A stretch of 64,000 nt of DNA from Ranitomeya imitator (Eukaryota): positions 72,354,001 through 72,418,000 of the forward strand of contig NC_091282.1 of assembly GCF_032444005.1 (NCBI RefSeq). The letters run 5' to 3'. Below the pieces are notes generated by a model. The model did no database searches and was not told the origin of the DNA. It was given only the letters and a program-made list of their open reading frames with translations. Each line of letters opens with the position of its first letter. The first letter of the stretch is position 1. A program made the translations under genes and the position numbers. Of this stretch, positions 12,037-37,383 are shown piece after piece.

Positions 12037-13198
12037 TACTACGTGGCTGGGCAATATACTACGTGACTGGGCAATATACTACGTGGCTGGCCAATATACT
12101 ACGTGTCTGGGCAATATACTACGTGGCTGGGCAATGTACTACGTGGACGGGCAATATACTACGTGGACATGCATATACTAGAATACCCGATGCGTTAGAA
12201 TCGGGCCACCATCTAGTGTATGTATAATGCCCTTGTGTGAACGAGCCCTGGGTGGCCGTATTATACGGTCTGTATACGGACGACCCTCGCACACTTTACA
12301 TATTGTGGTCTGCATTTTGCATTATTACTTCTAAGACAATACCAGTATTGTGCCCAAATATACATAAAAGGGGCAAATCCTCCGTTTACCACTTTTCTGT
12401 TTCGTTTACACATCACAGCTTACAAACTCTACTGCAAAATACCGGCAGATTCAAACAAGTGTGAACGAGGTCATAAAAGGATCTGTACCTGCTTTCCCTT
12501 CTGACCCCATGACAGATGGAGACACCAGATCCCTGATGCGCATGCTTCCAAGTACTTTACTTGCCAGTAAGGGTTAAATCCTTTTAAACTACATCGCAAG
12601 CAGCGCCATCATTATCAGTGCAAGTACTGATTGATTTGCAAAAAACCCTAAAAAAAAAACTTTTTTGCTCCACCACATGTGGTAGAGGACCCCAAGATTG
12701 GAAGCTTTATCACTTTTTTAGGCCACAGTCCAAGCCCGGATTTTTGCAGCTTCTACCTGATCAGTTTCTCAGGCCGCACTGCTCTTTTTAAGAGCCAGGA
12801 ACAAAAATAAGGATTATTTGATCAGTTTTGCTAAGTTTAGTTGAGGCATAGCCAGCTGAACACTCACCGTTCTGCAGCCGCGGAGAATGCTATATTCAGC
12901 ACTGCTCTACAAAATCTCCTTCCTGGGGCCAAAGAACAGGGAGAGGCGAAGCCCGGCCCCTCTATCATTGCCAACTATTCACAGCTCCAGAGGCAAACAC
13001 GGGATATGTAATCTGCAGAGTAAAGGTCTCTGAAAGTGCGAAATCCTCAGTAGTTTTCCTGTCACCATGCAATGGTGCTGCTGTATCTAAGTCTAAAGTG
13101 AGATACTACCTGCTAATCTGATGCATCTAATCCTACCATGTGATTAACTGCAGTCTGGGTATCTGACCGTTTTTGTTTTGCTTTCACACTGTGGCACT

Positions 13199-14502: not shown

Positions 14503-14783
14503 GGGAGACCACAATAACAGAATAGGAACACACGATATGGCGAAACAGATATAGACACCTGACAAACACTAATCCGCTCTTTGGACATCCCTTGTGTCTC
14601 TTTTGCAGCCATCACTCTACTGGGAAGACTGTTCACAAGATCTGAGTGGGTGCCAGAATTTGTGCCTATTTAGCCAAAAAAGCATTTGTGAGATCAGACA
14701 CTGGTGATAGAGGAGAAGGTCGGGCTACTAATCAGTGCTCCAGTTCAGGGGATCGAGTTTTTCCACTAATGACCCACACTTAA

Positions 14784-15083
14784 GGACCCCCATACACATT
14801 AGACTAATGTTGGCCGAACCCGCCGATATCAACAAGTTCACTTGACGGTGTAACGTGTACGGCAGCAATGACCGATTGATGGTCAGTAGATGTCGATCGC
14901 ACATGTCCGATTTCGGACTGGTGATCGCATTGTTCTCCCAGAGATAAGACGGCGGCTTTCTCATAGAGAACACAGGAGCGCTGGTCCGAACGAGAGCTCC
15001 CGTCTATGGAAGAGTCAACCAAGATGGCTGTAAGCTGAAGCACCATTTATTTGGCCGACAGACATCTAATGTATATGGCCGTC
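14784..15083. mobile_element. TTAA-flanked MITE
   Basis: TTAA at 14780-83 and 15084-87, with imperfect inverted ends (ccatacacattaga / tctaatgtatatgg). Confidence 0.65.
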
Positions 15084-15279
15084 TTAATGCCAATGTTCGC
15101 TTACAGAAGTTACGAGTGTTGGATATTATGCACCCGCTTCCAATGGTTGTGACCTAAACAGCTGAACTCAAGATATGGAAGAAGGAGGGTCACATACTTT
15201 TAGCCATACAGTGCAGGTATTTTTAGTCCCCCCCTACCACTTCATTCCCTTAAAGACAAGCCGTGAATCTGAACTGCAT

Positions 15280-15285
15280 TTTATT
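15280..15285 (-). terminator. Candidate polyadenylation signal for the THAP-transposase gene
   Basis: AATAAA on the minus strand at the end of an AU-rich, 3'UTR-like tract ~2.1 kb downstream of the stop. An ATTAAA variant lies nearer, at ~16265-16270. Confidence 0.4.
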
Positions 15286-16655
15286 TATCATTACATAAAG
15301 AAACTCAATTTACGTTGTACAATACAACTTTACAAATCAGATTGAATATTTTTGCACAAATTTTCTAACTTGTTTTGCATGAGCACACAAGTCACATCCA
15401 AAAGTCTCAGCCTTCTGCCATTACCCATTAGAGAACCATGGATCATAAGCCCTTAAACAGTTACACCGTTCAGAACTTTTTTGCTTTTGCTTTGGATGTA
15501 ACTGGAGGATAAAAGACAGACCTCCAGATCAGTGCACACTGAAGTCATGCAAAGTATCTCCAAAGTCAGTAGAAAGGGATTCTTCCGGTGAAAACAAGTC
15601 ATTCTCTATGTGGCACCCGCAAAGAAGCCAAGCACCGAGCTTTGCAGCCACATGGAGTTACTGTTGAGCTTGAGCACAGCCACTAACAGGACTAAAAAAA
15701 AAATATTTTTTGCTTTATAATCTTTTTACTGTTTCAAGGGAATATCCAGATTTTTCACATGTTACCAAATATGGAATGAAATGTTATAAAAATAAGAGTG
15801 GGAAAAAAACATTACCTACTTCTTAACCTACTCATGACCCTAGTGGTCCTTACTGTTCCTACAGTGACGTCCCATCTCGTACTCACGTGGCCCCTGCGAG
15901 GTATGACCGTTTTCAGATCCGAGTTTTCCATGCTACGTATACAGACCACAATACACTCCTGACCCGCTGTAGGTCCGTGCATTGAGGCCCGCACATGTAT
16001 CGTGAAAAACACTCATCTGAAAGCAGATCCAATGAGGCTCACTGTTATGAATGGAGTTAGAATTATGTAAATTTTGCACCCCAATATGAGCAGTAAATTA
16101 AAACCATCCAGCTTTCTCGAGCAACTACATTCGCGCTCTTCAGGGTTTGTGGGCACATTAGAGCAAGAAGAACAAACTTATTACATTTTAGTTTTAACAT
16201 ACAAAAACAAGTACAGAGCCTAAAATTTGGGGGCATACAAGTAGTATAATATAACGCATTTTTTTTTAATTGTACATCATTGACATAATTCGTAACTCCA
16301 CCAACTGGAGTGAGTAATAGAGGGGAAGTCTCTCACGGATCACTCAAGGGATTCAAAAGACAAGTTTTTTTTTCTTAAGATTTATATAACGCTGAGTAAC
16401 TTTACAAATACTTTGTTTTACTTTTCTAATACTGATCTTATGTTCCATTGTAGTCTTACATATCAGTAACATCTGGAGCAGCATCTACCGCTCTTCTGTT
16501 ACTACAATGCACAGTATTGCACAAAGAATTGATCAAGCATTTTGGTTGCATTTTTGGCAGATGGCTTTCTTTTGACAATAAAGAGGAATAGGATCCATGA
16601 GAAAAAGTGGTTTATAGTAGGAGGCCCCCTATAGTCAGTGACTGCTTAAAGTTAA

Positions 16656-17272
16656 AGGGAACCTGTCACCCCCAAAATCGAAGGGGAGCTAAGCCCACCG
16701 GCATCAGGGGCTTATCTAAAGCATTCTGTAATGCTGTAGATAAGCCCCCGATGTATCCTGAAAGGTGAGAAAAAGAGGTTAGATTATACTCACCCAGGGG
16801 CGGTCCTGCTGCGGTCTGGTCCGATGGGCATCGCGGTCCGGGGCCTCCCATCTTCTTAGGATGACGTCCTCTTCTGGTCTTCACGCTGTGGCTCCGGCAC
16901 AGACATACTTTGTCTTCCCTGTTGAGGGCAGAGCAAAATACTGCAGTGCGCAGGCGCGAAAGGTCAGAGAGGCCCAGCACCTGCGCACTGCAGTACTTTG
17001 CTCTGTCCTCAACAGAGCAGACAAAGTATGTCTGTGCCGGAGCCACAGTGTGAAGACCAGAAGAGGACGTCATCCTAAGAAGATGGGAGGCGCTGGACCA
17101 GACCGCAACGCCCATCGGATCAGACCGCCCCTGGGTGAGTATAATCTAACCTCTTTATCTCATCTTTCAGGATACATCGAGGGCTTATCTACAGCATTAC
17201 AGAATGCTGTAGCTAAGCCCCTGGTGCCGGTGGGCTTAGCTCACCTTCGATTTTGGGGGTGACAGGTTCCCT
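16656..17272. mobile_element. T2-type (Kolobok-related) palindromic MITE
   Basis: TTAA|AGGGAACCTGTCA...TGACAGGTTCCCT|TTAA. The two ~300-bp halves are near reverse complements. Confidence 0.92.
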
Positions 17273-17419
17273 TTAAGGATTGCTGCGAGTATGCAAACCC
17301 TACTCCAGTTTTTTTCTGGAGTGTCTATGACAAGAAGAATCAAGGGGTGTAATACAAAAAATAATTAGACTTTAAAAAAAAAAAAAAAAACTAACAACAT
17401 TTCAACATGAAACACAACA

Positions 17420-19645
17420 TCAAGTATTGTCCAAGTGTGGAAGGTCCCGGTCTCTTTGTGACAGCTTTAGTAGAGCAGCAGGCTGGGCTACACTCAGCTC
17501 CATCTTGCTTTTCTTGCGCACAGAAGTAACCACTTCTCGTAATAAGTCAAAAATAAAGTCCTGGCTTTTGCGCTCATAAAGAGCTTTTACCACCAGAGAT
17601 TTACGGCCCCTGGGAAATTTGGCACAAAGTCTAGGGGCACCGACCGTTGTTGAGTCCTTTAGGGCTGCTTGGACTCTAGTTACATTTTGGTTATGATCCA
17701 ATATTGCTAGCTGGGTCCTGGCCACCATTTCGTCCATGTAAAAACGAAGCCGACTAGGTCGGTATTTTCGACATGTGCTATGGAAGATCTCCAGAGAGTC
17801 TGAATGGCAATAGAAGGATACACGCTTTAAGTCTCTCTGCACAGAAGGGCTGAGCACAATTTCTTTAAGTCTACGGTAGGCCAAGGAACCCTTCGAAAGC
17901 CACCTGGTAGGTTTGGAGCCTACATTGTGCTGGCACTTCCAGTAGTCAGAACTGGAACGCCATTCGTGCACATTATTAACATGGTACTGCAACGCATTCC
18001 AGCGATCCAACAACTCTTCTTTGTTTTCATCGCAGGTCTTCACACACCACCACAAGTGCGATTTGACGGGCAATGACCAATCCAAGAGGACTTCACAGTG
18101 TTTTTTCTTGGCCTGGAAAAGTATTTTATTATTAATGGATCTTGCCAAGTGCCAAGGGTCAACGCGGTGAACAATATTGCTATAACTATCCTTCATTATT
18201 TTCCTAACTCCGACGCCACGGTCGGTGGTTACCATTTTAACATTGACCCCTTTTTCTAAGACGCAATTCAGCGCTTTCTTAAATGTTATGTTTTTGTGGT
18301 GAGCTTGAGATAAACTGGGCAGATGTTGCTGTATGTGAAATCCAAGAATCTTTTTAGTTTCTGCATCCATCATGACACAGGTATAATACTTAGTCAAGTG
18401 GTCGGGTCGGGCGGCTTGGTAGTCCCCTGCCAGGCATACGGGCTTCTCTCTAAGGCGGGTTATAATAGACTGCTGCTCCATGAGCCAGTGACGATTTAAG
18501 GTTGGAAACAAATGTGTTAACTGGTTTTTGTAATAGGTGGATTTTTTGACAAATTTCAAGTTCAACAATTTTACCATTTGAAGAATTTTGAGGAAACTTG
18601 TGCCGCTATATAAGACAGCAGCTGATGCCAAAACATCCCCCAATGGTTGTTTGCCCAGTCTTGGCTGGCTCTCCCATATGGTTTTGGTGTGGCCGCTTGC
18701 ACATTTGACTTCTACAATTACAGATGACCCCACGAAGCTCTTTCGAACATGTGTTACACGATCCTCACATTTACTCTGTGCCTGACATGGTATCATCCCA
18801 ATAAGTTTATTAAGGCAACTTTCAAACACTATAAACTTTTTGTCACGGACGGGACTCTTGGGACCCTCGTAGATGCATCTGAATTCTTCGTTATGGGTTT
18901 CATCCTCTGCATCTTCATCGCTTTCAACGTAGAATGATTCTTCTTCCTCCTCTTCGTAGTCAGATTCATGAAAGGTACAATCAACACGTTTTGGGCATCT
19001 TCTATCCTTTAGACCTTTGTGACTACTTTCCACTCGAGTCTCATTTTGCCCTTGAAACATTCGTACTGACGTTTGAGTTTGTGCATGTTTTTTTCCAAAC
19101 TTTGGTGTCATTCCGATTCTCTCAGAATCTGTATTGGTACCTCGATCAACCACAACTTTCCACACCCTACTCGGTTCTGTGGAGATGGAAGATGGATTAT
19201 CAAAAAGCAGTGGATTATCCTCTCCTATTTGGATAGTATGGTATAATAAAGGTTTACTTGAGGTGGACGGACCTTGATCCGCCACAACCCGATAAGTCTG
19301 AGATATTTTTCTTTTTTTCCTCTTTGGACCATCTTCTTTTGGAATTACACAGTTTGGTGGTGTTCGGACAAATAGAGTTGGTATAGAATTTCTTTTCAAA
19401 GTTCGACGAAAACCATCGTTCATGTAACAATCATCAGTAAAATGCTTGGAACACATGCGATAGATATCAGAACTCTTTCCTACGATGATCTTTTCAACTG
19501 AGGCGTCCAAGTCGTTATCAAATTGACCAGTTTGCTGTAACCATTGCCTTATAATCATTGGGTTGTTTGGGAAGGAGTGCATAATGATGCCTGTACCTCT
19601 GGACTTCCATGTGTAACCACATCCTTTAACGATACATGAAGGCAT
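17420..19645 (-). CDS. THAP-domain / Kolobok-type DDE transposase-derived protein (741 aa), candidate domesticated gene
   Basis: Uninterrupted ORF. N-terminal THAP C2CH (MPSCIVKGC...MCSKHF...SIPTLF), acidic linker, C..C..C..GH finger, LAGD, TTDR, DPWH, HLWWC, LEIFHS..KY.P.R and LAILDHNQN match Kolobok transposase motifs as I recall them. A splice acceptor (ttacag|G) lies 11 nt upstream of the ATG. Confidence 0.88.
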   Translation of the reverse strand: MPSCIVKGCGYTWKSRGTGIIMHSFPNNPMIIRQWLQQTGQFDNDLDASVEKIIVGKSSDIYRMCSKHFTDDCYMNDGFRRTLKRNSIPTLFVRTPPNCVIPKEDGPKRKKRKISQTYRVVADQGPSTSSKPLLYHTIQIGEDNPLLFDNPSSISTEPSRVWKVVVDRGTNTDSERIGMTPKFGKKHAQTQTSVRMFQGQNETRVESSHKGLKDRRCPKRVDCTFHESDYEEEEEESFYVESDEDAEDETHNEEFRCIYEGPKSPVRDKKFIVFESCLNKLIGMIPCQAQSKCEDRVTHVRKSFVGSSVIVEVKCASGHTKTIWESQPRLGKQPLGDVLASAAVLYSGTSFLKILQMVKLLNLKFVKKSTYYKNQLTHLFPTLNRHWLMEQQSIITRLREKPVCLAGDYQAARPDHLTKYYTCVMMDAETKKILGFHIQQHLPSLSQAHHKNITFKKALNCVLEKGVNVKMVTTDRGVGVRKIMKDSYSNIVHRVDPWHLARSINNKILFQAKKKHCEVLLDWSLPVKSHLWWCVKTCDENKEELLDRWNALQYHVNNVHEWRSSSDYWKCQHNVGSKPTRWLSKGSLAYRRLKEIVLSPSVQRDLKRVSFYCHSDSLEIFHSTCRKYRPSRLRFYMDEMVARTQLAILDHNQNVTRVQAALKDSTTVGAPRLCAKFPRGRKSLVVKALYERKSQDFIFDLLREVVTSVRKKSKMELSVAQPAALLKLSQRDRDLPHLDNT

Positions 19646-20970
19646 GATGGATCAACCTGTAATTAAAAATAATAATGCCAATTAATATAGCAATAAAAAA
19701 AGTACAGTGGAAATATGACAGCAGGATCAGACACGTAAGTATATTAAAAAATGTGACTTTTTCACATTTGGGTCTAGTAAAATCTATTTTAATAGGTTTC
19801 TTAAAAAAAATAAAAAATTATTAATTAAATTCAACACTGGTCTGTCTTTGCCAGTACAACTAGATATGCTACATCTAAAGAGTCACTGACTAGCGCTGTA
19901 TAATTAATAATCTACAGGCATATGACAAGTGCCCGTTTTCTTACAGCGGTCCACGCACTATGTGGCCGCTTTTTATATTACAGTAAAATTCACTTCACTT
20001 GGCATCAAGTATCAGATTATCAAGCATTCTGGATTATTGGCCGTCATAGATGAGCACCATAAGGACCAGGAGAGTTTTCACTTGTTTGTTTTTTTTCTCC
20101 CCTTCTTCCAAGAGCCATGACTTTTTTTCAACTTTTCCATCAAGACAGCTTATTTTTTGCGGGAAGAACGGACACCATTATTTTTACTATACAATGAATT
20201 GGAAGATGGAAAAAGAAAAAAAAAGTGCTGTGGAATTAAAAAGAAAAACAAAACAGCAACTCAGTGGCTTTTTTTGTGCGTTTTTGTGCTCGTGACGTTT
20301 GTAATAAAAATGAACTGGTAACTTTGCTCTAGGAGTATCTAGAGATTAACTCTGGAGCACCGGATAACAAAGCCAGCACCTGCAATAAATGTAGCAGGCT
20401 CCTGTAATCCCGCTTTATGTAAGGAGTGCACACGTCCGCCATACATGTATGGCGAGGTTCCTCGGGGGAGGGACTTCAGGCTGCTGTTAGCCACGCCCCC
20501 CTGTAAAGACCATAAAAATTAACACTACATAAAAAGGCCCAAATCTCTAGAACCATAGAATGGATTTTGAAAAGGAAAAATTCAGAAAAATCAGGGGAGC
20601 AGTGGGAATAAAGTAGAAGCAGGAACTGGCCACATTTTATCTGGTGACAAGTCCTCTGTCACACACTCGCTCTGTTAATTTCCAAGCATTTGACCACTGT
20701 ACAGCCAATTATTATACTTATGCATATTCCATATTTTGTACTTACCTAGATTTACACTCCTTTGCCATTTTTTCAGTGCACTATGGGAGGTATACCAGCT
20801 GCTCCGTACACGAAGCTTCCAGTTTCTGACTTTTCATTAGCACAAGTGAACCGAAGTCTTTTATATGTATTTCTTAACACATTTACCGTAATAAAAAAGA
20901 TTTCTTAACCCTTACATTGGTTCCAAGATATCTCTTTACATTTCCTGGCTGCATTTAGAGAACTATTTAA

Positions 20971-21371
20971 AGAGGTCTTGTAACCAGGTCAAACGTGTCC
21001 CACCTTTTGCTTTTATTTTATTCCCGATGCTTCTTTGATTGTGTACTTTATTCGTATTTCTTTTTTTAAAAGTCTTCCATTTTTCTCCAGAAATATTGGC
21101 TTTTTTACTTAGAGTTAATTCTTCTTGTCTTAGGAGGGGGCGAGTTCACAGGATCCTTTGGGGCATGTCTTGTAGTCAGCTTTGCATTATTACCCTGTGA
21201 GCCACGCCCCTTTGGTTAAGGGCCTAAAAATTGGTACTAAATAAAAAGGCCCATATCTCTGGAACCGTCTGGCAGATTATTAAAAAAAAAAAAAAAAAAG
21301 AGAGAATACTCAGGGGAGCAGTGGGGATAAAATGAGCAAAAATGGCAATTTTTGACCTGATGAAGGGTCCC
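20971..21371. mobile_element. TTAA-flanked T2-type MITE
   Basis: TTAA at 20967-70 and 21372-75, with imperfect inverted arms. A related right-half fragment lies at ~20450-20670. Confidence 0.65.
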
Positions 21372-22509
21372 TTAAAGTTTTCTTTCCGGGTTCCACAGCT
21401 GTGCCCAGGGTCATGTGTCCACTGCTAGGATTCTTTTTTATGCATTTTAGATAGAACTATGGGAATCAGAAAGAAACAAAACTTCCTTTCAGTACACGGC
21501 TAACTACATTGCCAGAAACAGAAAGTTATGAAAGCACAAGGGAAAAAAAAAAAATAAAAGTTTGTCTTAAACTCTTGAGAGTACATATTTGAGATTCCAC
21601 CAAAACCTCCCATACACATTAGATGAAAATTGGCCAAGCGGATGTGTATGGCGGCCTTCAGACTGTCCACCAACAGATAAGGATCAGGCAGCTGTCATTT
21701 CGGCCCCAATCTTTTTGTTCAGGGGCAATAAGCCGCTGACATGGGGAATTTCTCAGCGGCTTTCCCCACTGTTGCCTTTTAAAGTGCATTAACACAGTCA
21801 ATCCTAACGCTCATGTGTATGGGGGAGTCAGAAGAGAACGGTCTACAGAGAAATCGTGAAACAGCTCTCATCTACGAGGGCAGACTGAAGGTGAGGAGTA
21901 ATCCGGTTAAGGTGAAGATCTGGCGATCCTCCCCAGGTGCCCATCGCAGTGAGAGTATCAGCAGGTGTCAGCTAAGTCCTATTAGGTCTACATGAATGGA
22001 CGGCACTGGATCACCAACTATCAATAGGTGTCTACTAAGTACATACACGGTTAGGTAATCCCTGCATGTGTTGCAGGCGTATATTATTCAGCCGTGGGGA
22101 CACGAACATATTTTTTGAGCACGCCGAAGAAACTCGGTTAGCACATGAGCATATTCGTTCATTACTAATATCTAAAAAAAAGTTAATATTTTAATTGTAG
22201 TATTTTCTCTGTGCGCTATACCCATTGCAGAGCCTGGTCTCAGTGTTTTGGATAAAAGTAACAAACCCTTAAAAAAAAAAAAAAATCATAATTTGAGCCA
22301 GGTCATTTTAGAAGGCTTGATGGAAAATTCAGGATTTTCATTTATACTCCTATGCTGGGTCCATCACAGGTACCCAGATATATCACATACAGAATAAAAT
22401 AAAAAAATATATATTACCTTTGCCCCTAGGTAGATCCCTTTTCTCCACAGATATTACAGTGCTACATTAAGCCTCTGTATAAACCGCTAGACTTCACCAC
22501 ACAATGTAA

Positions 22510-22911
22510 GGCTATGTTCACACGTTGCATTTCTGCTGCGTTTTTTTTCTGCACGCAAAACCTGCTCTTTTGGCAGTAGAGAAGCGGCTTTAAAAAAAAA
22601 AAACAACAAAAAAAAAAACAGGTTTTGCTGCATGTTTCATGATACAGATTAGTGCCTGTTGTTCCTGAGTTTTCTGCAGCAAAACCTCATACCTGTGATT
22701 TTTAACTTTTTAATTGCTTTCTATGGGTGAAAAAACGCAGAAAGAAGTGACATGCCGCAGTTTTAAAAAACGCAGCAATTTCCCAATTCAGTCAGAAAAA
22801 AAGAGAAACATTGTGCGTGCATGAGATTATGGAAATCTCATAGCTTTTGCTAGTAATGCAGCTTTTAATTTGCATAAAAAAGTAGCAAAAACGCAACATG
22901 TGAGCGTAGCC
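22510..22911. mobile_element. PIF/Harbinger-like MITE
   Basis: Inverted termini taa|ggctatgttcacacg ... catgtgagcgtagcc|ta. Confidence 0.65.
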
Positions 22912-23796
22912 TACGTCCGCTCTTATATATTTATTTTGTAGGATGTGTGTACTTTTGTTCCCAAAAAAATAGTCTGCAAATACCGACTAAAAACCCAATT
23001 ACAGCAAAAGTGACCAACTCCAACATGTCAGATCGTTACAAAAATCAGAATTTTCTTTATAGTTCGCTTTCTTTCCTTAAGTTTATTTTTTTATTTTAAA
23101 GGTTCTTAACACGCTCTCATCGGAGCCAAATTTTATTATTGCACACTTTGTTTCCTTACTCTTCTTCTAAGGGCCATCTTTTTTTTTCAGTCAATATTAC
23201 CGTACAAGGGCTCATTGTTTGGGAGACGGTTTGTTGTTTGGAATGCTGAGATTTTTTTATTTTTTGTTTACCATTTAAGAAATTGAATAAATTAAAAGAT
23301 GAGGAGGAAAAAATAAGTAATTTAGCTATTGTTTTAGGCTTTGGTTTGTTTTATATGGGTAAACATTGTGGTGAGAATCACCTAGCTGTAAAATTACAGA
23401 TTACGGAGATACCAAAAAGACTTTTTATTTATTTATTTACATTTCAGTAGTTTAAAAAAAATAAAAAAAAATTCTAAAACTATGAAAAAATAAAACTCTT
23501 TGTGATCATTTTTCAACTACTGGCTGTGTAAATAATGGAGGGTTTTGTCGTGGTTGTCATGGATACGTCCACTGACTGACTTAATTCTCTTCTTTGTTTT
23601 CCTTTCCATTTAGGTTAGTAGTTGTAGCCACGGCAACCAGGATAAAAAAAAAACTCCATTGTTTACACCCCAGGCAGAAAACGGTTTTCCAGTATAAGGT
23701 GGTTTACAATGAAAACCTACAGGTATGTCATGGAGGACGTCATAGAAAGAGAAAAACATTACTCTCCCGGGTACCATACTGGTGAAGGGATCAGAT

Positions 23797-23810
23797 CCAC
23801 CAGAGGGCGC
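23797..23810 (+). promoter_or_regulatory. CTCF consensus motif
   Basis: CCACCAGAGGGCGC matches the CCASYAGRKGGCRS core exactly. Occupancy is unknown. Confidence 0.45.
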
Positions 23811-24586
23811 AGTGCGGCACCAGCTACATACAATTATTTTATCCATTAATTGCCGGTACAGGGAATGATCACGGAGAGACCCCGACGGTGTATATGCCCC
23901 CGATGTGCTGCGAGGGAAGAGGACTGTGTTACTAATCACAGTCACTGAGAGTTCAATATTCGCGCCAGTCTTGCCCATGGATCGTGTCCGGTGTCACAGC
24001 GGCGCGCCAACTAAATAAATAGCAGTTTCAGCTGCAATACCACACACAACCAGGGGACAGGTGTGGTGCTGTCTCCATGTTTTTACAATCCTACCCCATG
24101 AACTAAATCCAAATGACCGATCCCGTCCCTCCTTCCACCATTCATTCACCTCCATCAGAAGCCAGCGGCTTTTATCTAATGTGCATGGGTAGGAAGAAGC
24201 CAGCCACAGACGCAAGACTTTTTCTGCAGATTGTTGGCACATCCAGCTAAATTTGGCGAGATCTGGCTTCAATGCAAAATCGCCAACATGCCACCCCATC
24301 CAAAAAAATCATGGGCCCTTAACAGTCTTCTCACATGGCCCAAAGGGATCTTTTAAGGCCCCATAGGCTGTAGAGGTCCAGAAGCGACTTCAGCCTCGGC
24401 ACCCACTATAGTTCCGCCCTTGTGTGGTGGTTCTACACATACGAAGATAAGAGGTAAGTGACACCGATCTGCAGATAGATCCCTCATGTCTAAAGGGTCA
24501 TCGGACTATAAAAGATTTAGGTATCATTAAAAGGTGTCTCTCCCAGTCATGAGCTTGTCAACCTTGCTCCTGTGCAGAAACACTCG

Positions 24587-27267: not shown

Positions 27268-27906
27268 AGGAAACCTGTCACCCCGAAAATCGCGGGTGAG
27301 GTAAGCCCACCGGCATCAGGGGCTTATCTACAGCATTCTGTAATGCTGTAGATAAGCCCCCGATGTTACCTGAATGAGGAGAAAAAGACGTTATATTATA
27401 CTCACCCAGGGGCGGTCCCGCTGTTGGTCAGGTTGGATGGGTGTCTCTGGTCCGCTGCGGCGCCTCCCATCTTCATTACAAGACGTCCTCTTCTGATCTT
27501 CAGCCACGGCTCCGGCGCAGGCGTACTTTGCTCTGCCCTCTTGAGGACAGAGGATAGTACTGCAGTGCGCAGGCGCCGGAAAGGTCAGAGGCCCGGCGCC
27601 TGCGCACTGCAGTACTTTGTCTGCCCTCAACAGGGCAGAGCAAAGTACGCCTGCGCCGGAGCCGTGGCTGAAGATCAGAAGAGGACGTCTTGTAATGAAG
27701 ATGGGAGGCGCCGCAGCGGACCAGAGACGCCCATCCGACCTGACCAACAGCGGGACCGCCCCTGGGTGAGTATAATCTAACGTCTTTTTCTCCTCTTCTT
27801 TCAGGTAACATCGGGGGCTTATCTACAGCATTACAGAATGCTGCAGATAAGCCCCTGATGCCGGTGGGCTTACCTCACCCGCGATTTTCGGGGTGACAGG
27901 TTCCCT
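27268..27906. mobile_element. T2-type palindromic MITE (same family as 16656-17272)
   Basis: TTAA|AGGAAACCTGTCA...TGACAGGTTCCCT|TTAA, near-perfect palindrome. Confidence 0.92.
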
Positions 27907-31820: not shown

Positions 31821-32870
31821 ATGACCAGGAGGCGGCAAAAAGACGCTGGCACCGGCGATGCAGGAGCCGATGTAAGGGAGGACGCCGAGAAGGAGAAAGC
31901 CGCATGTCAGCGGCGAATGGAGGTGGCCGCAAAGCTGCAGCAGTATGCCAGAGTGGAGGCTGCTGAGGAGGCAGAGGCAGGATCCGGAGCTGGAGCTGAT
32001 CAGGAGATGGTGGGAGCAAGCGCAGCCGAGCAGCATGAGGTACAGAGGGGGAAGGAGAGAGGCAGCATGGCTGGGGCTAGTGGGGGACCTGGAGGCATAC
32101 CGCAGGGAGAGGAGCCGACCCTTAGGGATGTAATCACCCTGATCTCCTCGTGTCAGCAATCCCTGAATTCCCTAGCCCAGCAGATGCAGGAAGTTAAAGG
32201 GGACACGGCACAGATTAATGCAGCTCTGCAGAAAATGGACAAACGTATAGGAGTGGTGGAGGAGAGGGTGAGCACGGCAGAAGATCACATAGTTAAGCTA
32301 CAAAAAGCTGAGAAGAAGTTCGCCCAAGCAATAGCCGAGCTCGCTGCCAAAAATGAGGATCTGGAAAATAGATCCAGAAGAAATAATATACGTATAGTGG
32401 GGCTGCCTGAAAAGACTGAGGGGAGAAATCCCACTGAGTTTGTTGAAAACTGGCTGCTGGAGAAGATTGGGAGCACAGTGCTGACAAAAGTCTTTGCTGT
32501 TGAACGTGCTCATAGGGTCCCGCCGCAGCCCCCTGCCCCAGGAGCGAATCCCCGTACCATGCTTGCTAAAATACTGAACTACAGGGACAGAGACATTATT
32601 CTCAGGAAGGCTAGAGAGATGGAGGATCTGACGGATGGAGGTCAGAAAATTGCCATTTATCCGGATTATTCCGCTGCAGTTCAGAAGCAGCGGATGAAGT
32701 TTACTGGAGTCAAGCGGCGACTGAGGGAGCTGGGAGTGCAGTACTCAGTGATGTTTCCTGCCAAGCTGAGACTGGTGGCTTTTAATAAGACACATTTCTT
32801 CCTGACACCGGAGGACGCTACCCAGTGGCTTGACACCAGTGAGAAAAAGTTGAAAGGAGTGGGAGACTGA
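31821..32870 (+). CDS. L1 ORF1p (coiled coil + RRM + CTD), intact, 349 aa
   Basis: DLENRSRRNNIRIVGLPE, ERAHRV, PRTMLAKILNYRDRDIILRKAR and IYPDYS...FPAKLR motifs of L1 ORF1p. Confidence 0.9.
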   Translation: MTRRRQKDAGTGDAGADVREDAEKEKAACQRRMEVAAKLQQYARVEAAEEAEAGSGAGADQEMVGASAAEQHEVQRGKERGSMAGASGGPGGIPQGEEPTLRDVITLISSCQQSLNSLAQQMQEVKGDTAQINAALQKMDKRIGVVEERVSTAEDHIVKLQKAEKKFAQAIAELAAKNEDLENRSRRNNIRIVGLPEKTEGRNPTEFVENWLLEKIGSTVLTKVFAVERAHRVPPQPPAPGANPRTMLAKILNYRDRDIILRKAREMEDLTDGGQKIAIYPDYSAAVQKQRMKFTGVKRRLRELGVQYSVMFPAKLRLVAFNKTHFFLTPEDATQWLDTSEKKLKGVGD

Positions 32871-33311
32871 CATGTCGACGAGATCTAGCTGGAAATTGGT
32901 TTCTCTGTTGCTGGCGGAGAGTTTTGCGCTTGTTAGCGTCGGTTAAAAAAGTTGAGCAACTGCTGAGGGTTCTGCTAGGCCATGTTGAGGACTGGCCGGA
33001 GGGGACAGTACTGTCTACTAAATGTGGGGGAGGAGGGCTATGGAGGGTACTGTAAATTGGTTTACTATTTTTCTTATATGTCATAGAAGTGCAATGTTAA
33101 GTTATAATAAAGTTAAAGTTAGGGGAAATTATGTTTAGTGTGGCAGTGGGACGCGAATGGAGAGGGTTAAGTGAGGGAGAGTGTTCGCAGTGGAGCCCCA
33201 CTCTTGCTGAGAGGAAGAATGCGTTACACTGGGGGGGTTAGGGGGGTAAGTTGGGAGGGGGCAGGGGGGGTGGGAGGGGTGGGGCAGCTCATACTTGGGA
33301 AATTGGATACT

Positions 33312-36300
33312 ATGAGAAATGATGAGCCACAGGGGGGGGGAGATTGTATTAAAATATTGAGTTGGAATGTGAGAGGTCTGGCGGATAAAACACGGCGAGC
33401 GGCAAGTCTACAGTATGTCCGAGAACAGAAGGTCTCAATGATATGTCTGCTGGAAACACATTTAGTGCGGGAGAGGGTGAACGTATTGAATAGGCGCTGG
33501 ATACAGAGGGCGTATCACTCTACTTTCTCGACGTACTCTAGGGGGGTGTCTGTGTTGATTCCTACTGGGGTGCAGTATGAGGAGGTAGCGGTAAAGGAAG
33601 ATGTGGATGGTCAGTATGTGGTGGTGAAATGTAAAATGAATGGAGTATTGATGTGTATAGTGGCAATGTATATTCCGCCCCCATACTCAAGCAAGAAGAT
33701 AAGAGAGGTGCTGGAGAGGGTAGAGCGCTGGGGACCGTTACTATTACTAATTATCGGCGACCTTAATAATATATGTGATGACTTTGGGATAAGAACAAAA
33801 ACCCCCAGAATAGGACGGCGGGACATATCACTACGTTTGGGACTTATGTCGGGGAAGTGGGCATGGTTGATTTATGGAGAGTTAGGCATGTCGGGGAAAG
33901 GGCGTATTCATGCTACTCACCAGCTCATGGTACGCTGTCTAGGATTGATCTGGCACTGGGTAACCGATTACTAGATACGATGGTAGGGGAGGTGAGATAT
34001 TTGCCTAGGGCTCTCTCAGACCATAGTCCAGTTGAAGTGGAATTTCGACCAGTGGGGACACGGAACGGGAGCAGAAGGGAGTGGAAAATTCACCCTAATT
34101 GGCTACACAGCATAGACTTGGAGAAGATTAAGAAGGAATTGGTGGAATATTTTGAGATAAATGAGGGAAGTGTAGACGTGCTTACTGTGTGGGAAGCCAT
34201 GAAGGCGTACTTGAGAGGGCTGTTTAGGGATATTAGCAGGTGTAAGCGGAAATCGAGAGAGGCAGAGAGGCTGGCGATAGATGGGCTGAGGGTGGCTGAA
34301 GATGAGATGGTAATAATGGGTACTCTGGAGGCTGGGAGGAGGTTAAAAGCGGCTCAAAACCAGCTAGAGGCGGTCTTGCTGAGTAAGGCTGAAAGGAAGA
34401 GGGAATTCATGAATCTGGCCTATTATCAGGAGGGTGAATCAGTGGGTCATTTGATGTCGCTGGTGGCATCTGCCCAGAGAAATACTTCCTTTGTTCACTC
34501 TCTGGTGACTGGGAGTGGTGTTACTGTTTCGGAGACTTCAGAGATTTTGGAGACTTTTGCAGATTTTTACGCAGACTTATACTCCTCTCGGGTAGATGGG
34601 TCAATGGAGGACACGGTGGCGTTCCTTGAGGAGTTGGAGCTCCCGAGGCTGAGTGACAGGGATAGGGAGGATTTGGAGGCTCCCATTACGGAGGAGGAAC
34701 TGGGACGGGCATTGCAGTCGATGGCTAATGGGAAGGCGCCTGGCGTAGACGGATTTCCTGCCGAAATTTATAAAAACTTGGGGGAAGTGTTGATCCCTAA
34801 ATTGAAGGTGGTCTTGGAGGAGGCTAGGAATGGCGGAAGGCTGCCGGCATCTATGAGGGAGGCCACAATAGTGGTAATTCCAAAGGAGGGGAAGGACCTG
34901 ACACAGCCGGACTCATACCGACCAATTTCTTTACTTACTATCGACGTTAAACTCCTGGCTAAGGTGTTGGCGATGAGGTTGACAAGTGTTATTTCTGGCC
35001 TGATACACTCAGATCAATCTGATAGGTCAACTGCGATCAACTTGCGAAGGCTGTATGTGAACTTGCAACTCAGAGCTGATAACTGTGGCCAGAGAGTTAT
35101 TGCATCTTTAGACGCTCACAAGGCGTTCGATAGTGTGGAGTGGGGATATCTCTGGCAGGTGTTGCGAAGAATGGGGTTTGGACCGCAGTTCATATCATGG
35201 ATTCAATTAATGTACTCGATGCCGATGGCCAGGGTTAGGGTAAACGGGGAGTTGTCACGGACCATACAATTGGCTAGAGGGACGAGGCAGGGATGTCCGC
35301 TCTCCCCCCTTTTGTTTGCTCTAGCAGTGGAACCGCTGGCCGCTACGCTTCGACGATCTGATGAGATGACGGGATTTAAATATGGGGTGATTGAAGAAAG
35401 GGTGGCGTTGTATGCGGATGATATTTTGTTGTTTCTGGCTGATCCAGTTGCATCCTTGGAGGGAGCCATTGGGATTATTGAACGATTTGGATCAGTGTCT
35501 GGGCTTAGGATAAATTGGAGTAAGTCTATCTTGTTTAAGGTGGCTGGAGGTGACGAGTAAATTTAAGTACCTGGGAATATGGGTATCTATGCCGGTAACT
35601 GATTATATACATGAGAATCTGACTCCAATCTTGGGTGCCCTCAAGGCAAAAGCGGATGCTTGGCTTAAGCTGCATTTGTCTGTGGTAGGTAGGGTGAATC
35701 TTATCAAAATGATTCTGATGCCGAAAATACTGTATATTCTTCACAATGCGCCGGTTTGGATACCACGTGGGAAATTTAGACAGATCAACTCTCTGTTTAG
35801 GAATTTGATTTGGGGGAGGCAGCATCCGCGTATCAAACTGGAGACACTTCAGCGACCCAAGGATGATGGGGGTCTGGCATTGCCTAACCCTGAGTTGTAC
35901 TTTCTTGCAGCCCAGAGTCAGCATCTAAGGGGCTGGGCGCATGAAGGGTCATCTGGAGCGGTACAGCGGTTGATGGAGGTGGTGACAAAAAGAAGGCCAG
36001 TGGTACAATGTTTGGAGGATGGATCCTTGGAGAGTTTGGGGAAGCTATATCTGACTTTGCTGTTGATACGCAAGCTGTGGAGTAGATTGAGGCACATACG
36101 TGGGATCACGGACTTGACTAGATACTCGCCGATATGGCATAATAACAATCTGAAAGAATTTGAGGCATTAGGGGTACTGATAGAGTGGTTGGGCAAAGGG
36201 ATTCAGTATGGGTACCAAATAATTGAACAAGGTGAACTGAAATCATTTCCCAATTGCAGGCGGAATTTGGCCTTGGGACTGCAGGGGAGTATCAATATTT

Positions 36301-37027
36301 GCGGATGAGGCATGCCTTTGGAGCTCAGAGTAGGAACGGAGGTATTAGGATTCAAAGGGATATAGTACTGGAGTATGTGTGTAATGACGGGACGACTGGA
36401 GGGGTCATATCCACGCTGTACAGGGATCTGTTGCGCACTTTCCTATTGGGGTTTCCAATAATGGCGAGAGCTAAATGGGAAAGGGATTTGGGCCCAATAG
36501 ATAACGAGACTTGGGAGTCGGTGTTGGAATGGATCCCAAGACTGTCGCTGAGTGAACCGTATAGACTGTCACAGCTCTATGTGATACACAGAGTTTACAG
36601 GTCTCCGATGGTGCTATATAAGGCAGGATTGCGTAATGACTCTGAATGTCCGAGGTGTAAGTCTACGGATGCAGACATTTTCCATATGATGTGGACATGT
36701 CCGAGGTTGGCTGCCTTCTGGGTGGTAGTTTTGAGTCGTATGGAAGGTGCGTATGGATGCACGGTGCCAAGGGATCCAGTTGTCTGTTTGTTGGGATGCG
36801 TGGATGAGATTGGAGTGGATAAACACCTAAAGATAGCTATAGCCAGATTGTTATACATGGCTAGGAAGGTGATAGCTAGAAACTGGATTAGGGAAGAGCC
36901 GCCGTCAAGAGGAGAGTTCCTCCAGTATGTGAAACAGGGCCTGACACTAGAAAAAGGGATTTATAAGAAGAAAGGGAAAACTGAAACGTTCAATAAAATG
37001 TGGTCTCCATGGATTGCTATGGGATAG
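33312..37027 (+). pseudogene. L1 ORF2 (APE endonuclease, reverse transcriptase, zinc finger), frameshifted
   Basis: SWNVRG, LLETH, IGDLN, SRID, SDH; YRPISLL, QGCPLSP, YADD; CPRC...HMMWTC. Split over 4 ORFs (shifts near 33790, 35550 and 36250) plus small deletions. Confidence 0.92.
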
Positions 37028-37268
37028 TAATGTGAAGTGTGGCTTATACGAATGGTTGAGGGATTAGATATTCTATCGTTTTAATGATGGTAGTAATTAA
37101 CAAGATGAGCTGCCTTGTGGGGTGGGGGCGGGGGGCTTTGGGATCTAAGGGGGTTGTTTGAAGGGGGAGGGGGGGAGGAAATACTCTATATTGAAAATGT
37201 AAATGAAACATGTTAATTGCCTTGTTATTCTTAATAAAAATTTATTTGAGTTAAAAAAAAAAAAAAAA

Positions 37269-37383
37269 GGAACCTGACGGCTGTGAATCTTGCTGCCCGA
37301 GCCCCCGAGCAGCATGCCGGCTGTATGACAAACATATGCTGCCCATGGATCGGGCACAGCATGGATCAGTTGTTATGTTTCCT
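37269..37383. mobile_element. Short T2-type MITE whose left terminus was the L1 target site
   Basis: The pre-insertion sequence ttaaaaggaacctgacggctg...cagttgttatgtttcc-ttaa is an imperfect palindrome with TTAA ends. Confidence 0.6.

What the first reader, a model, noticed from the sequence alone, without database searches (positions are those of the whole stretch)
17420..19657. Candidate domesticated Kolobok transposase gene with a THAP DNA-binding domain
Seen: a 741-codon ORF with no lesions, in a region where every other transposase is broken. A splice acceptor lies 11 nt before the ATG. I found no TIR/TTAA pair and no second convergent ORF framing it, and it has an AU-rich 3' tract with AATAAA. 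Known: Kolobok transposases carry THAP, zinc-finger and DDE modules, and domesticated Kolobok transposase genes have been reported in Xenopus. Inference: this is a host gene derived from Kolobok, possibly lineage-specific and uncharacterised, acting as a DNA-binding regulator or nuclease.
Basis: partly seen in the sequence, partly recalled or inferred. Interest (0 to 1): 0.8.

Follow-up and report, generated by a model that had tools for sequence, protein, structure and literature searches.

The report
Domesticated Kolobok transposase gene in frogs
This is an intact frog gene that began as the cutting enzyme of a Kolobok "jumping gene"; it has been kept as one copy, at the same chromosomal place and under purifying selection, across hyloid frogs, making it an undescribed relative of the tamed Kolobok genes already known in Xenopus.

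Summary
An unbroken 741-codon ORF lies at 17420-19645 (-), with a THAP domain (Pfam E=4e-13) and a splice acceptor 11 nt before the ATG.

The Kolobok assignment is supported:
- The protein has D408/D475/E619, a DxxH motif, and the Kolobok-specific H2CH zinc finger between DxxH and E.
- It aligns over its full length (E=9e-107) with the X. laevis protein at the exact coordinates of XKol-Tpase Lv6 in Hikosaka & Konishi 2018.
- The modelled core has an RNase H fold nearest to ISCth4, Hermes and P-element transposases.

Domestication is supported:
- There is one orthologue per species in ten hyloid frogs, and the gene tree follows the species tree.
- dN/dS is 0.15-0.27; the codon model gives omega 0.26, and omega=1 is rejected (p~5e-131).
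- No TIRs or TTAA duplications frame the ORF.
- A conserved block lies 4-5 kb downstream in four species.
- A non-coding first exon, the acceptor, and 15 nt of 3' UTR are conserved.

One detail was not confirmed: no AATAAA lies near the stop on the coding strand.

The most likely function is a nuclear, THAP-guided DNA-binding protein. Whether it still cuts DNA is open, because two leptodactylids have changed the triad.

The kind is known from Xenopus; this hyloid gene is a new member. A scan note 680 Mb further on this sequence piece probably marks a paralogue.

The parts
17420..19645 (-). Coding sequence, 741 codons plus TGA stop (17420-17422), all within exon 2
   Evidence: ORF; orthologues at 61-92% identity; omega 0.26
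19370..19636 (-). THAP zinc-finger DNA-binding domain (residues 4-92; C4, C9, C65, H68; P26, W35, F69; SIPTLF box)
   Evidence: Pfam PF05485, E=4.1e-13; THAP1/THAP2 structures; motif table
19304..19327 (-). Basic cluster PKRKKRKI (residues 107-114), a likely nuclear localisation signal, conserved in all group A orthologues
   Evidence: the NLS role is inferred
18899..18967 (-). Conserved acidic tract (ESDYEEEEEESFYVESDEDAEDE, residues 227-249)
   Evidence: alignment
18656..18838 (-). Cys/His-rich beta module preceding the catalytic core (KFIVFESC...C...C...C.SGH..W.SQP; invariant C277, C287, C293, C315, H319)
   Evidence: invariant columns; three beta strands in the model; matches the N-terminal part of Pfam PF20700 in relatives
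17789..18424 (-). RNase H-like DDE catalytic core from D408 to E619 (D408, D475, DPWH 496-499, alpha-helical insertion, E619)
   Evidence: residues; beta1-3/alpha/beta4/alpha/beta5 topology with D, D and E in canonical places; Foldseek: ISCth4 2.7e-7, Hermes 3.6e-6, P element 5.6e-5
17927..17983 (-). H2CH zinc finger (H555, H560, C571, H573) between DxxH and the last E; this is the Kolobok-specific feature
   Evidence: invariant in all sequences; definition in PMC9587614 and PMC6004289
19646..19656 (-). 11-nt 5' UTR part of exon 2, containing an in-frame TGA
19657..19680 (-). Polypyrimidine tract and AG splice acceptor (AG = 19658-19657), conserved in Rhinoderma and E. coqui
   Evidence: A2; the X15 contig matches 19596-19657 and then runs on unlike the window; no coverage just upstream in X1 and X2
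19657..23853 (-). Inferred intron 1 (about 4.2 kb)
   Evidence: inferred
23854..24077 (-). Putative non-coding exon 1. It is homologous to the 5' UTR of mRNA-like contig L003 and to collinear blocks upstream of the gene in Leptodactylus and Engystomops. The homologous donor position in the window reads CCG|GCAATT (a GC donor), whereas Engystomops has CAG|GTAAGT. The 5' limit is not determined.
   Evidence: Part of the block is a dispersed small repeat, so the exon is inferred, not shown.
17400..17414 (-). 3' UTR motif TGTTTCATGTTGAAA, invariant in six species just after the stop
   Evidence: A6
16656..17272 (.). T2/Kolobok-type palindromic MITE inserted in the 3' UTR region. It has TTAA duplications at 16652-16655 and 17273-17276 and AGGGA...TCCCT termini, and it is high copy in sequencing runs. 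It is specific to this lineage (absent at this place in the other loci).
   Evidence: (depth in the thousands, against 3-18 for the ORF); T2-MITE definition in PMC6004289
12861..13031 (-). Conserved block ending in a splice donor (ACG|GTGAGTG; last exon base 12868), 4.4 kb downstream of the stop. The same block lies 4-5 kb downstream, in the same orientation, in E. coqui, Dendropsophus and Leptodactylus. It serves as a positional (synteny) marker and is probably the promoter and first exon of the next gene.

Best explanation
This is a host gene of hyloid frogs that descends from the transposase of a Kolobok DNA transposon. The window comes from a dendrobatid poison frog; the closest protein is from Dendrobates tinctorius (91-92% identity).

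The mobile element around the gene is gone: there are no terminal inverted repeats and no TTAA duplication. The gene now has a host-type structure. A short non-coding first exon lies about 4.2 kb upstream and is spliced to one large exon that holds the whole 741-codon reading frame and a conserved 3' UTR start.

The gene has been inherited vertically as a single copy since at least the common ancestor of Dendrobatidae, Aromobatidae, Rhinodermatidae, Eleutherodactylidae, Leptodactylidae and Hylidae. It has been under purifying selection along its whole length.

Most likely mechanism (inferred, about 55%): the protein enters the nucleus through its KRKKRK cluster and binds specific DNA sites through the N-terminal THAP zinc finger. 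It uses the zinc-bearing RNase H-like core as a DNA- or protein-binding platform, acting as a regulator or chromatin factor rather than as a mobile-element enzyme.

The catalytic triad D408/D475/E619 is intact in this species and in 8 of 10 orthologues, so residual DNA cleavage or strand transfer is possible. It is not required everywhere: Leptodactylus has D-D-D and Engystomops has D-N-D.
For: Shown:
- The ORF is intact and has a THAP domain.
- The Kolobok signature is present in the correct order: D...D...DxxH...H2CH...E. The diagnostic comes from PMC9587614 and PMC6004289.
- The window protein aligns over its full length with P0124, BLASTP E=9e-107. The P0124 gene lies at X. laevis chr8L:99349197..99351548(-), exactly the Lv6 entry of Table 1 in PMC6004289.
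- The AF2 core model (pLDDT 76, pTM 0.74) has RNase H topology, and its best PDB matches are ISCth4, Hermes and P-element transposases.
- There is one orthologue per species, each on one contig.
- Group A is monophyletic (100/100) and its topology matches the species tree.
- All seven available CDSs are open at dS 0.45-1.05. Pairwise dN/dS is 0.15-0.27. Under GY94, omega is 0.26, with 2dlnL=593 against omega=1.
- A conserved downstream block sits at the same distance and orientation in four species.
- Groups A and C share a chromosome in four species (contig lengths), and probably in this genome too.
- The acceptor is conserved, and mRNA-like contig L003 breaks at it. The exon-1 homologue is collinear in three genomes.
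- Contigs in four runs cover the ORF at a flat, low depth and stop at or before 19657.
- No TIRs frame the ORF.
Against: - No function has been tested.
- The sequencing runs are only guessed to be RNA, and they are contigs rather than reads. Expression in this species is therefore suggested, not proven.
- The exon-1 donor in the window would be a non-canonical GC donor, and part of exon 1 is a dispersed repeat.
- Gene-level synteny (PIGO and MOSC neighbours) could not be followed, because fetched flanks are limited to 10 kb. No MOSC coding sequence is present in the window.
- Copy number in the window's own genome was not counted directly.
- The intact triad in most species fits a catalytic role as well as it fits a structural one.
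- No group A orthologue was returned for Bufo. This may be a loss or a gap in annotation.
Confidence: 0.85

Rival explanations
1. The gene is domesticated but still works as an enzyme. In this reading the host keeps it because it cuts or joins DNA. It might mobilise the abundant T2/Kolobok-type MITEs, as Hikosaka and Konishi proposed for Xenopus, or it might act as a site-specific nuclease guided by THAP.
For: - D408/D475/E619, DxxH and H2CH are all intact here and in 8 of 10 orthologues after dS of up to about 1.
- The core has the lowest dN/dS of the three regions (0.18-0.21).
- Two T2-type MITEs with clean TTAA duplications lie in the window, one of them in this gene's own 3' UTR region, and the family is very high copy in the runs.
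- The MITE terminus AGGGAACCTGTCACCCC resembles the TIR of Xenopus XKol subfamily A3, AGGACATGTCAACCCC.
Against: - Engystomops has D475N and E619D, and Leptodactylus has E619D, yet the gene stays under the same constraint there.
- The sister paralogue group C has lost the first D and the H of DxxH but is also conserved.
- The two MITE copies in the window are only 82-87% alike, so they are not recent.
- No activity data exist.
Confidence: 0.2
2. It is the transposase gene of a still mobile, autonomous Kolobok transposon that happens to be intact.
For: The ORF is intact with all catalytic and DNA-binding motifs. Kolobok-type MITEs are present nearby.
Against: - There are no TIRs or TTAA duplications around the ORF.
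- There is a single orthologue per species, and the gene tree equals the species tree.
- Flanking blocks, the intron acceptor and the UTR are conserved across species.
- Omega is 0.26 between species.
- The depth in sequencing runs is low and flat.
Confidence: 0.02
3. The protein derives from a different C/DxxH superfamily (MuDR/Mutator, P or hAT) rather than Kolobok, and the THAP domain is shared only by convergence, as in P element/THAP9.
For: - Pfam labels relatives with PF20700, 'Mutator-like transposase' (P0032 E=7.8e-12).
- The best structural match is ISCth4, an IS256-family transposase (the bacterial kin of Mutator), followed by Hermes (hAT) and the P element.
- No Kolobok structure appeared among the matches for comparison.
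Against: - A zinc finger between C/DxxH and the last E is reported to be absent from MuDR, P and hAT and present in nearly all Kolobok transposases (PMC9587614). It is invariant here.
- There is full-length collinear homology to a protein catalogued as a Xenopus Kolobok transposase, matched by exact coordinates.
- The window protein itself does not reach PF20700 at E<=1.
Confidence: 0.04

Closest known systems
Domesticated XKol (Kolobok) transposase genes of Xenopus, subfamilies D1-D9 (Hikosaka & Konishi 2018, PMC6004289)
   Same: - The architecture is the same: THAP, then the DDE core, with an H2CH zinc finger.
- The genes are non-repetitive, syntenic between species, and under purifying selection.
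- Some members keep DDE and others have lost it.
- The host (a frog) also carries T2-type MITEs.
- The window protein shows direct full-length homology (E=9e-107) to the protein at the paper's Lv6 coordinates.
   Different: - It is not one of the Xenopus genes. The nearest Xenopus protein returned is only 35% identical (P0025).
- This clade is found in hyloid neobatrachians and is traced over six families, whereas the Xenopus cases were dated only to before the X. laevis/X. tropicalis split.
- It has a conserved two-exon structure and a hyloid-specific sister family (group B, about 1,120-1,270 aa, in tandem clusters).
Autonomous Kolobok transposons (Kapitonov & Jurka; Repbase Kolobok-1_XT/2_XT; XKol subfamilies A1-A6)
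   Same: The transposase motifs are the same and occur in the same order.
   Different: There are no AG...CT inverted repeats, no TTAA duplication and no dispersed copies. The gene is inherited vertically.
THAP9, the domesticated P-element transposase of vertebrates
   Same: It has an N-terminal THAP domain fused to an RNase H-like DDE core of the C/DxxH group, it is a single-copy host gene, and its catalytic residues are retained. The P-element transposase is a structural match (E=5.6e-5).
   Different: It belongs to a different superfamily. The window protein has the H2CH finger between DxxH and E, and by sequence it matches XKol, not P. Statements about THAP9 activity rest on the literature (bioRxiv 10.1101/2021.08.01.454642 abstract) and were not tested here.
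Cellular THAP-domain proteins (THAP1, THAP2 and others)
   Same: The THAP zinc finger has a C2CH core and the AVPTIF-like box. The sequence matches the THAP1 and THAP2 structures.
   Different: Those proteins lack a transposase core. The HCF-1-binding motif [DE]HxY, typical of many THAP proteins (from my own knowledge), is present at the homologous place in group C and in the Xenopus, Rana, Rhinophrynus, Leptobrachium and Ciona relatives. It is replaced by KKHAQT in this gene's clade.

Membership tests
Kolobok superfamily transposase (protein) | N-terminal THAP domain (C2CH, P/W/F, AVPTIF-like box) | tested here: met
   Pfam THAP E=4.1e-13; C4, C9, C65, H68, P26, W35, F69 and SIPTLF are present; feature list from PMC6004289
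Kolobok superfamily transposase (protein) | DDE triad on an RNase H-like fold | tested here: met
   D408 lies on beta1, D475 after beta4, and E619 on a helix after the insertion domain in the AF2 model. Foldseek hits are to DDE transposases. Catalysis itself was not tested.
Kolobok superfamily transposase (protein) | [quoted passage not shown] | tested here: met
   D496-P-W-H499, conserved in group A, group B and X. tropicalis P0025; definition in PMC9587614
Kolobok superfamily transposase (protein) | Zinc finger (H2CH) downstream of C/DxxH and upstream of the last E; absent in MuDR, P and hAT | tested here: met
   H555, H560, C571 and H573 are invariant in all 14 aligned sequences; definition in PMC9587614 and PMC6004289
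Kolobok superfamily transposase (protein) | Sequence homology to a catalogued Kolobok transposase | tested here: met
   BLASTP E=9e-107 over residues 1-711 against P0124. P0124 is encoded at chr8L:99349197..99351548(-) of GCA_001663975.1, which matches Lv6 in Table 1 of PMC6004289. Repbase sequences themselves were not available.
Kolobok transposon (mobile element) | Terminal inverted repeats with 5'-RR...YY-3' ends framing the transposase gene | tested here: not met
   No significant inverted repeat frames the ORF. Blastn of 14600-15300 against 21400-22000 finds nothing.
Kolobok transposon (mobile element) | TTAA target-site duplication at the element ends | tested here: not met
   No element ends exist around the ORF. 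TTAA duplications are found only at the separate MITEs.
Kolobok transposon (mobile element) | Multiple dispersed copies in the genome | tested here: not met
   There is one group A protein per annotated species, each on one contig. The contig depth is flat at 3-18 for the ORF, against thousands for the MITE. There is no second copy in the window. A whole-genome count in the window's own assembly was not possible.
Domesticated (exapted) transposase gene | Single-copy orthologues whose tree follows the species tree | tested here: met
   Group A is monophyletic at 100/100. It resolves (window, Dendrobates) plus Anomaloglossus at 100/100 and 100/99, Leptodactylus+Engystomops at 89/94, and Hyla+Dendropsophus at 90/87.
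Domesticated (exapted) transposase gene | Purifying selection on the coding sequence | tested here: met
   NG86 dN/dS is 0.15-0.27 in 21 pairs. Under GY94+F3X4, omega is 0.26 and the LRT against omega=1 gives 2dlnL=593, p~5e-131.
Domesticated (exapted) transposase gene | Conserved genomic position (synteny) | tested here: met
   A block of about 180 bp with a splice donor lies 4-5 kb downstream, in the same orientation, in the window, E. coqui, Dendropsophus and Leptodactylus. An upstream exon-1 block is collinear in the window, Leptodactylus and Engystomops. Groups A and C share a chromosome in four species. Named-gene synteny (PIGO, MOSC) could not be followed across species.
Domesticated (exapted) transposase gene | Transcription as a host gene | tested here: inconclusive
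   Spliced mRNA-like Logan contig L003 comes from another hyloid. In the window's species, contigs of four runs cover the ORF and stop at the acceptor, and one contig breaks at 19657. However, the runs are only guessed to be RNA, and no raw reads were available.
THAP proteins that recruit HCF-1 | HCF-1-binding motif [DE]HxY between THAP and the C-terminal part (definition from my own knowledge) | tested here: not met
   No [DE]HxY lies before the core in any group A or B protein. It is present in group C and in the Xenopus, Rana, Rhinophrynus, Leptobrachium and Ciona relatives.
T2-MITE family (for the neighbouring repeat 16656-17272) | TTAA target site and terminal AGGRR motif in the TIR | tested here: met
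   The ends read TTAA|AGGGAACC...GGTTCCCT|TTAA. The second copy at 27268-27906 reads TTAA|AGGAAACC...GGTTCCCT|TTAA. Definition in PMC6004289 Background.

The most novel reading that the evidence does not exclude
A transposase that the host has kept for tens of millions of years because it is still catalytically active. It would be a single-copy, THAP-guided Kolobok enzyme that cuts DNA in hyloid frogs. It might be the standing source of transposase that keeps T2-type MITEs mobile, or it might be a programmed site-specific nuclease. Its sister family (group B) would have expanded in tandem, and a third paralogue (group C) would have been converted to a catalytically dead binder.
Probability: 0.12. 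Interest if true: 0.8.

Novelty: new member of a known kind. Interest (0 to 1): 0.5.

Why it matters
Domestication of Kolobok transposases has so far been documented only in Xenopus; in the paper library searched here, nothing covers other frogs.

This gene shows that the phenomenon extends to Hyloidea, the largest frog radiation. It provides a clean case that combines one copy per genome, a conserved position, strong purifying selection, a host-type intron, and a catalytic triad still intact in most lineages but altered in one family.

That natural contrast makes an old question testable: are such genes kept for DNA binding or for DNA cutting? The contrast is intact DDE in dendrobatids, hylids and others, against D-N-D and D-D-D in leptodactylids and a dead triad in paralogue group C.

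It also flags three uncharacterised gene groups that are currently annotated only as 'uncharacterized protein' in frog genomes.

Tried and rejected
- **MOSC neighbour.** I tried to follow named-gene synteny. A MOSC-domain gene lies next to or around the orthologue in Leptodactylus and Engystomops. tblastn found no MOSC coding sequence in the window or in the other 22-kb loci, so this marker could not be used.
- **PIGO neighbour.** The PIGO-like exon of the window has no match in the other loci, whose flanks are too short.
- **Missing DNA.** DNA for the Dendrobates, Anomaloglossus and Hyla sarda loci could not be fetched because the files are too large. The closest relatives are therefore missing from the dN/dS analysis.
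- **Possible TIRs.** Inverted matches at 14787-15078 and 21610-21825 (I4 and I13) were checked as possible TIRs and rejected, because the two regions share no significant similarity.
- **Pfam rve hit.** The hit (E=8e-4, below the cut-off) was used only as a hint of an RNase H fold.
- **Read laying limits.** The one read-laying run did not include exon 1, and it did not print the 27 unmatched letters of the junction contig. The exon1-exon2 join in this species is therefore not shown directly.
- **Paper supplements.** They hold no usable protein sequences of the XKol set. The link to the paper was made by genome coordinates instead.
- **Polymorphism.** The six SNPs seen in the runs are 3 synonymous and 3 non-synonymous, too few to say anything.
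- **Not attempted.** No complex-prediction job was run, because no binding claim is made.


Full report
**Observation.** The ORF is real. It runs from 17420 to 19645 on the minus strand, has 741 codons with an ATG start, and has no stops or frameshifts. Pfam finds a THAP domain at residues 4-92 (E=4.1e-13) and a sub-threshold integrase-core (RNase H) hint at 414-478. The THAP1 and THAP2 structures match by sequence.

A polypyrimidine tract and TTACAG end at 19657, so exon sequence begins at 19656, 11 nt before the ATG. An in-frame TGA lies within those 11 nt, which fixes the start codon.

No inverted repeat or TTAA pair frames the ORF. The only bracketing inverted matches, near 14.8-15.1 kb and 21.6-21.8 kb, share no significant similarity when compared directly.

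The other transposase-like ORFs in the window are fragments of Tc1/mariner and a LINE. An ORF at 42376-43944 (-) resembles PIGO.

The one detail I could not confirm is the AATAAA. On the coding strand, the first A[AT]TAAA after the stop is ATTAAA at 16265-16270.

**What family it is.** Two papers give testable definitions.
- Hikosaka & Konishi 2018 (PMC6004289) list THAP (C2CH, P/W/F, AVPTIF box), DDE and H2CH as the Kolobok transposase motifs.
[quoted passage not shown] The window protein has the following, in that order:
- C4/C9/C65/H68, P26, W35, F69 and SIPTLF;
- D408, D475 and D496-P-W-H499;
- H555/H560/C571/H573;
- E619.

An AlphaFold2 model of residues 266-741 (pLDDT 76, pTM 0.74) shows the beta1-beta2-beta3-alpha-beta4-alpha-beta5 RNase H topology. 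D408 lies on beta1, D475 lies just after beta4, DxxH lies at the start of the next helix, an all-alpha insertion carries the zinc ligands, and E619 lies on the following helix. Foldseek against the PDB returns ISCth4 (IS256 family), Hermes (hAT) and P-element transposases, followed by retroviral integrases.

A profile of the core finds 9,854 representative clusters at E<=1e-3 among 1.84 billion proteins, so this is a very large transposase family.

One of those hits, P0124, is encoded at X. laevis chr8L:99349197..99351548(-) in GCA_001663975.1. These are exactly the coordinates of XKol-Tpase Lv6 in Table 1 of the paper. The window protein aligns with it from residue 1 to 711 at 30% identity, E=9e-107.

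Pfam's label for relatives, PF20700 'Mutator-like transposase', reflects the kinship of these superfamilies. It does not outweigh the Kolobok-specific zinc finger.

**Why it is a host gene and not a transposon.**

*Copy number and phylogeny.* A search of 5.8 billion proteins returns exactly one close relative per species, each on a single contig:

| Species | Identity to window protein |
|---|---|
| Dendrobates tinctorius | 91% |
| Anomaloglossus | 83% |
| Rhinoderma | 72% |
| Eleutherodactylus coqui | 70% |
| Hyla sarda | 68% |
| Leptodactylus | 66% |
| Dendropsophus | 66% |
| Engystomops | 61% |

A maximum-likelihood tree of the core domain gives this group 100/100 support. Its internal topology follows the species tree: (window, Dendrobates) with Anomaloglossus, Leptodactylus with Engystomops, and Hyla with Dendropsophus.

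*Selection.* For the seven CDSs whose DNA could be fetched, all frames are open although synonymous divergence is 0.45-1.05. Pairwise dN/dS is 0.15-0.27, broken down as core 0.18-0.21, linker 0.29-0.37 and THAP 0.11-0.46. A codon model gives omega 0.26 and rejects omega=1 with 2dlnL=593.

*Position.* A block of about 180 bp ending in a splice donor lies 4.4 kb downstream of the stop in the window (12861-13031). It lies 4-5 kb downstream, in the same orientation, in E. coqui, Dendropsophus and Leptodactylus. The third paralogue group (C) lies on the same chromosome as this gene in Anomaloglossus, Rhinoderma, E. coqui and Dendropsophus (contig lengths). The scan noted a 'THAP + catalytically dead DDE' gene 680 Mb further along this same sequence piece.

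**Gene structure and expression.** The acceptor and its pyrimidine tract are conserved in Rhinoderma and E. coqui. A 3.5-kb Logan contig from another hyloid (L003, run SRR32581850) carries the full ORF and diverges from the genomic loci exactly at the AG, as a spliced mRNA would.

The 5' UTR of that contig matches collinear, same-strand blocks at three places: 4.3 kb upstream in the window (23922-24077), 6.1 kb upstream in Leptodactylus, and 9.2 kb upstream in Engystomops. Engystomops has CAG|GTAAGT exactly at the junction. The homologous window position, after 23854, reads CCG|GCAATT, which would be a GC donor. Part of this block is a small dispersed repeat, so exon 1 is inferred rather than shown.

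The Hyla sarda gene model spans 4.6 kb and adds an N-terminal extension from an upstream exon.

In the window's species, contigs from four runs of at least four studies cover the ORF at a flat, low depth. They reach 152 nt into the 3' UTR and stop at or before 19657. One 89-nt contig matches 19596-19657 perfectly and then continues with 27 unlike letters. These runs are only guessed to be RNA.

The first 15-20 nt of 3' UTR (TGTTTCATGTTGAAA, 17400-17414) are invariant in six species.

**Mechanism.** The following are shown:
- a THAP DNA-binding domain;
- a conserved basic cluster, PKRKKRKI;
- a conserved acidic tract;
- a Cys/His-rich beta module;
- a complete Kolobok catalytic core.

I infer that the protein is nuclear and binds specific DNA through THAP.

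The catalytic triad is D-D-E in 8 of 10 orthologues, including this one. It is D-D-D in Leptodactylus and D-N-D in Engystomops, yet constraint is unchanged there. Paralogue group C has lost the first D and the H of DxxH.

This pattern favours a function that does not need catalysis, such as a regulator or chromatin factor (about 55%). A retained nuclease or transposase activity in lineages with the full triad remains possible (about 20%).

The HCF-1-binding motif [DE]HxY (definition from my own knowledge) is present at the homologous place in group C and in the Xenopus, Rana, Rhinophrynus, Leptobrachium and Ciona relatives. It is replaced by a conserved KKHAQT in this clade and by AHTQT in group B. 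Partner use therefore probably changed at the origin of the A+B clade.

**Wider family.** Group B is sister to this gene (99/99). It comprises proteins of about 1,120-1,270 aa, several per species on one chromosome, with lineage-specific duplications. Rana, Leptobrachium and X. tropicalis proteins branch outside in species-tree order, but on long branches. An origin older than Hyloidea is therefore possible but not shown.

**Comparison and novelty.** The kind is known, because Hikosaka & Konishi described at least 10-14 domesticated Kolobok transposase genes in Xenopus. This gene is not one of them: the nearest Xenopus protein returned is 35% identical. It is annotated only as 'uncharacterized protein' in hyloid genomes, and no paper in the searchable library describes Kolobok domestication outside Xenopus. 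I therefore rate it a new member of a known kind, of moderate interest. The main open question is whether the intact triad is still used.

Noticed in passing
window 16656-17272 and 27268-27906: Two copies (82-87% alike) of a palindromic MITE of about 620-640 bp, with TTAA target-site duplications and AGGRR termini. This is the T2/Kolobok-type signature described for Xenopus. The first copy sits in the 3' UTR region of the domesticated Kolobok gene, and the family is very high copy in the sequencing runs. Its terminus resembles the TIR of Xenopus XKol subfamily A3.
   Followed up: partly
window 12861-13031 (-): A conserved non-coding block ending in ACG|GTGAGTG, shared with E. coqui, Dendropsophus and Leptodactylus at the same distance downstream of the gene. 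It is probably the promoter and first exon of the next gene, possibly the MOSC/MTARC-like gene annotated beside the orthologue in Leptodactylus (L006:20330-21361). No MOSC coding sequence is present in the window.
   Followed up: partly
window 42376-43944 (-): A 523-codon ORF rich in transmembrane segments that resembles GPI ethanolamine phosphate transferase 3 (PIGO). It is probably a large PIGO exon upstream of the gene on the same strand.
   Followed up: partly
proteins P0010-P0023 (other hyloid genomes): Sister family 'group B': THAP plus a long Ser/Pro-rich linker plus a Kolobok core, about 1,120-1,270 aa. There are two to four copies per species on one chromosome, with species-specific duplications, and most keep DDE. 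All are annotated as uncharacterised. This may be a tandemly expanding domesticated family.
   Followed up: partly
proteins P0028-P0031, P0033; same genome about 680 Mb beyond the window (scan note s1-294740): Paralogue 'group C' (about 700-717 aa, one per species). It has the first catalytic D replaced by S and DxxH changed to DxxQ, but it retains the [DE]HxY motif. It lies on the same chromosome as this gene in four species.
   Followed up: partly
L005:150-202 and L005:10001-12205 (Engystomops): The annotated MOSC-domain gene model starts with a 3-codon exon (ATGCTGCAG|GTAAGT) about 560 bp upstream of the THAP gene's putative exon 1 and spans the whole THAP gene on the same strand. The THAP gene is either nested in its first intron, or the annotation has joined exons of two genes.
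   Followed up: no
PMC6004289 Tables 1 and 2 against P0124 / L007: The protein at the coordinates listed for Lv6 has AFPTLF and K in place of the last E. These are the motifs that Table 2 gives for Lv5, not Lv6. Both CDSs are 2352 bp, so the two rows may be swapped in one of the tables.
   Followed up: no
window 32000-38000: Strong positive GC skew (+0.29 to +0.33) over a LINE-like element with a reverse-transcriptase ORF (33857-35557) and a zf-RVT hint (36254-37024).
   Followed up: no
codon tree; pairwise dN: The branch leading to the window sequence (dendrobatoid stem plus tip) carries about twice the non-synonymous change of the other lineages. dN is 0.14-0.15 to Rhinoderma and E. coqui, against 0.08 between those two. 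Many of the changes are in the THAP domain.
   Followed up: no
one search hit list: No group A orthologue was returned for Bufo gargarizans or Ranitomeya imitator, although both have group B proteins. This could be loss, missing annotation, or (for Ranitomeya) an unannotated gene.
   Followed up: no
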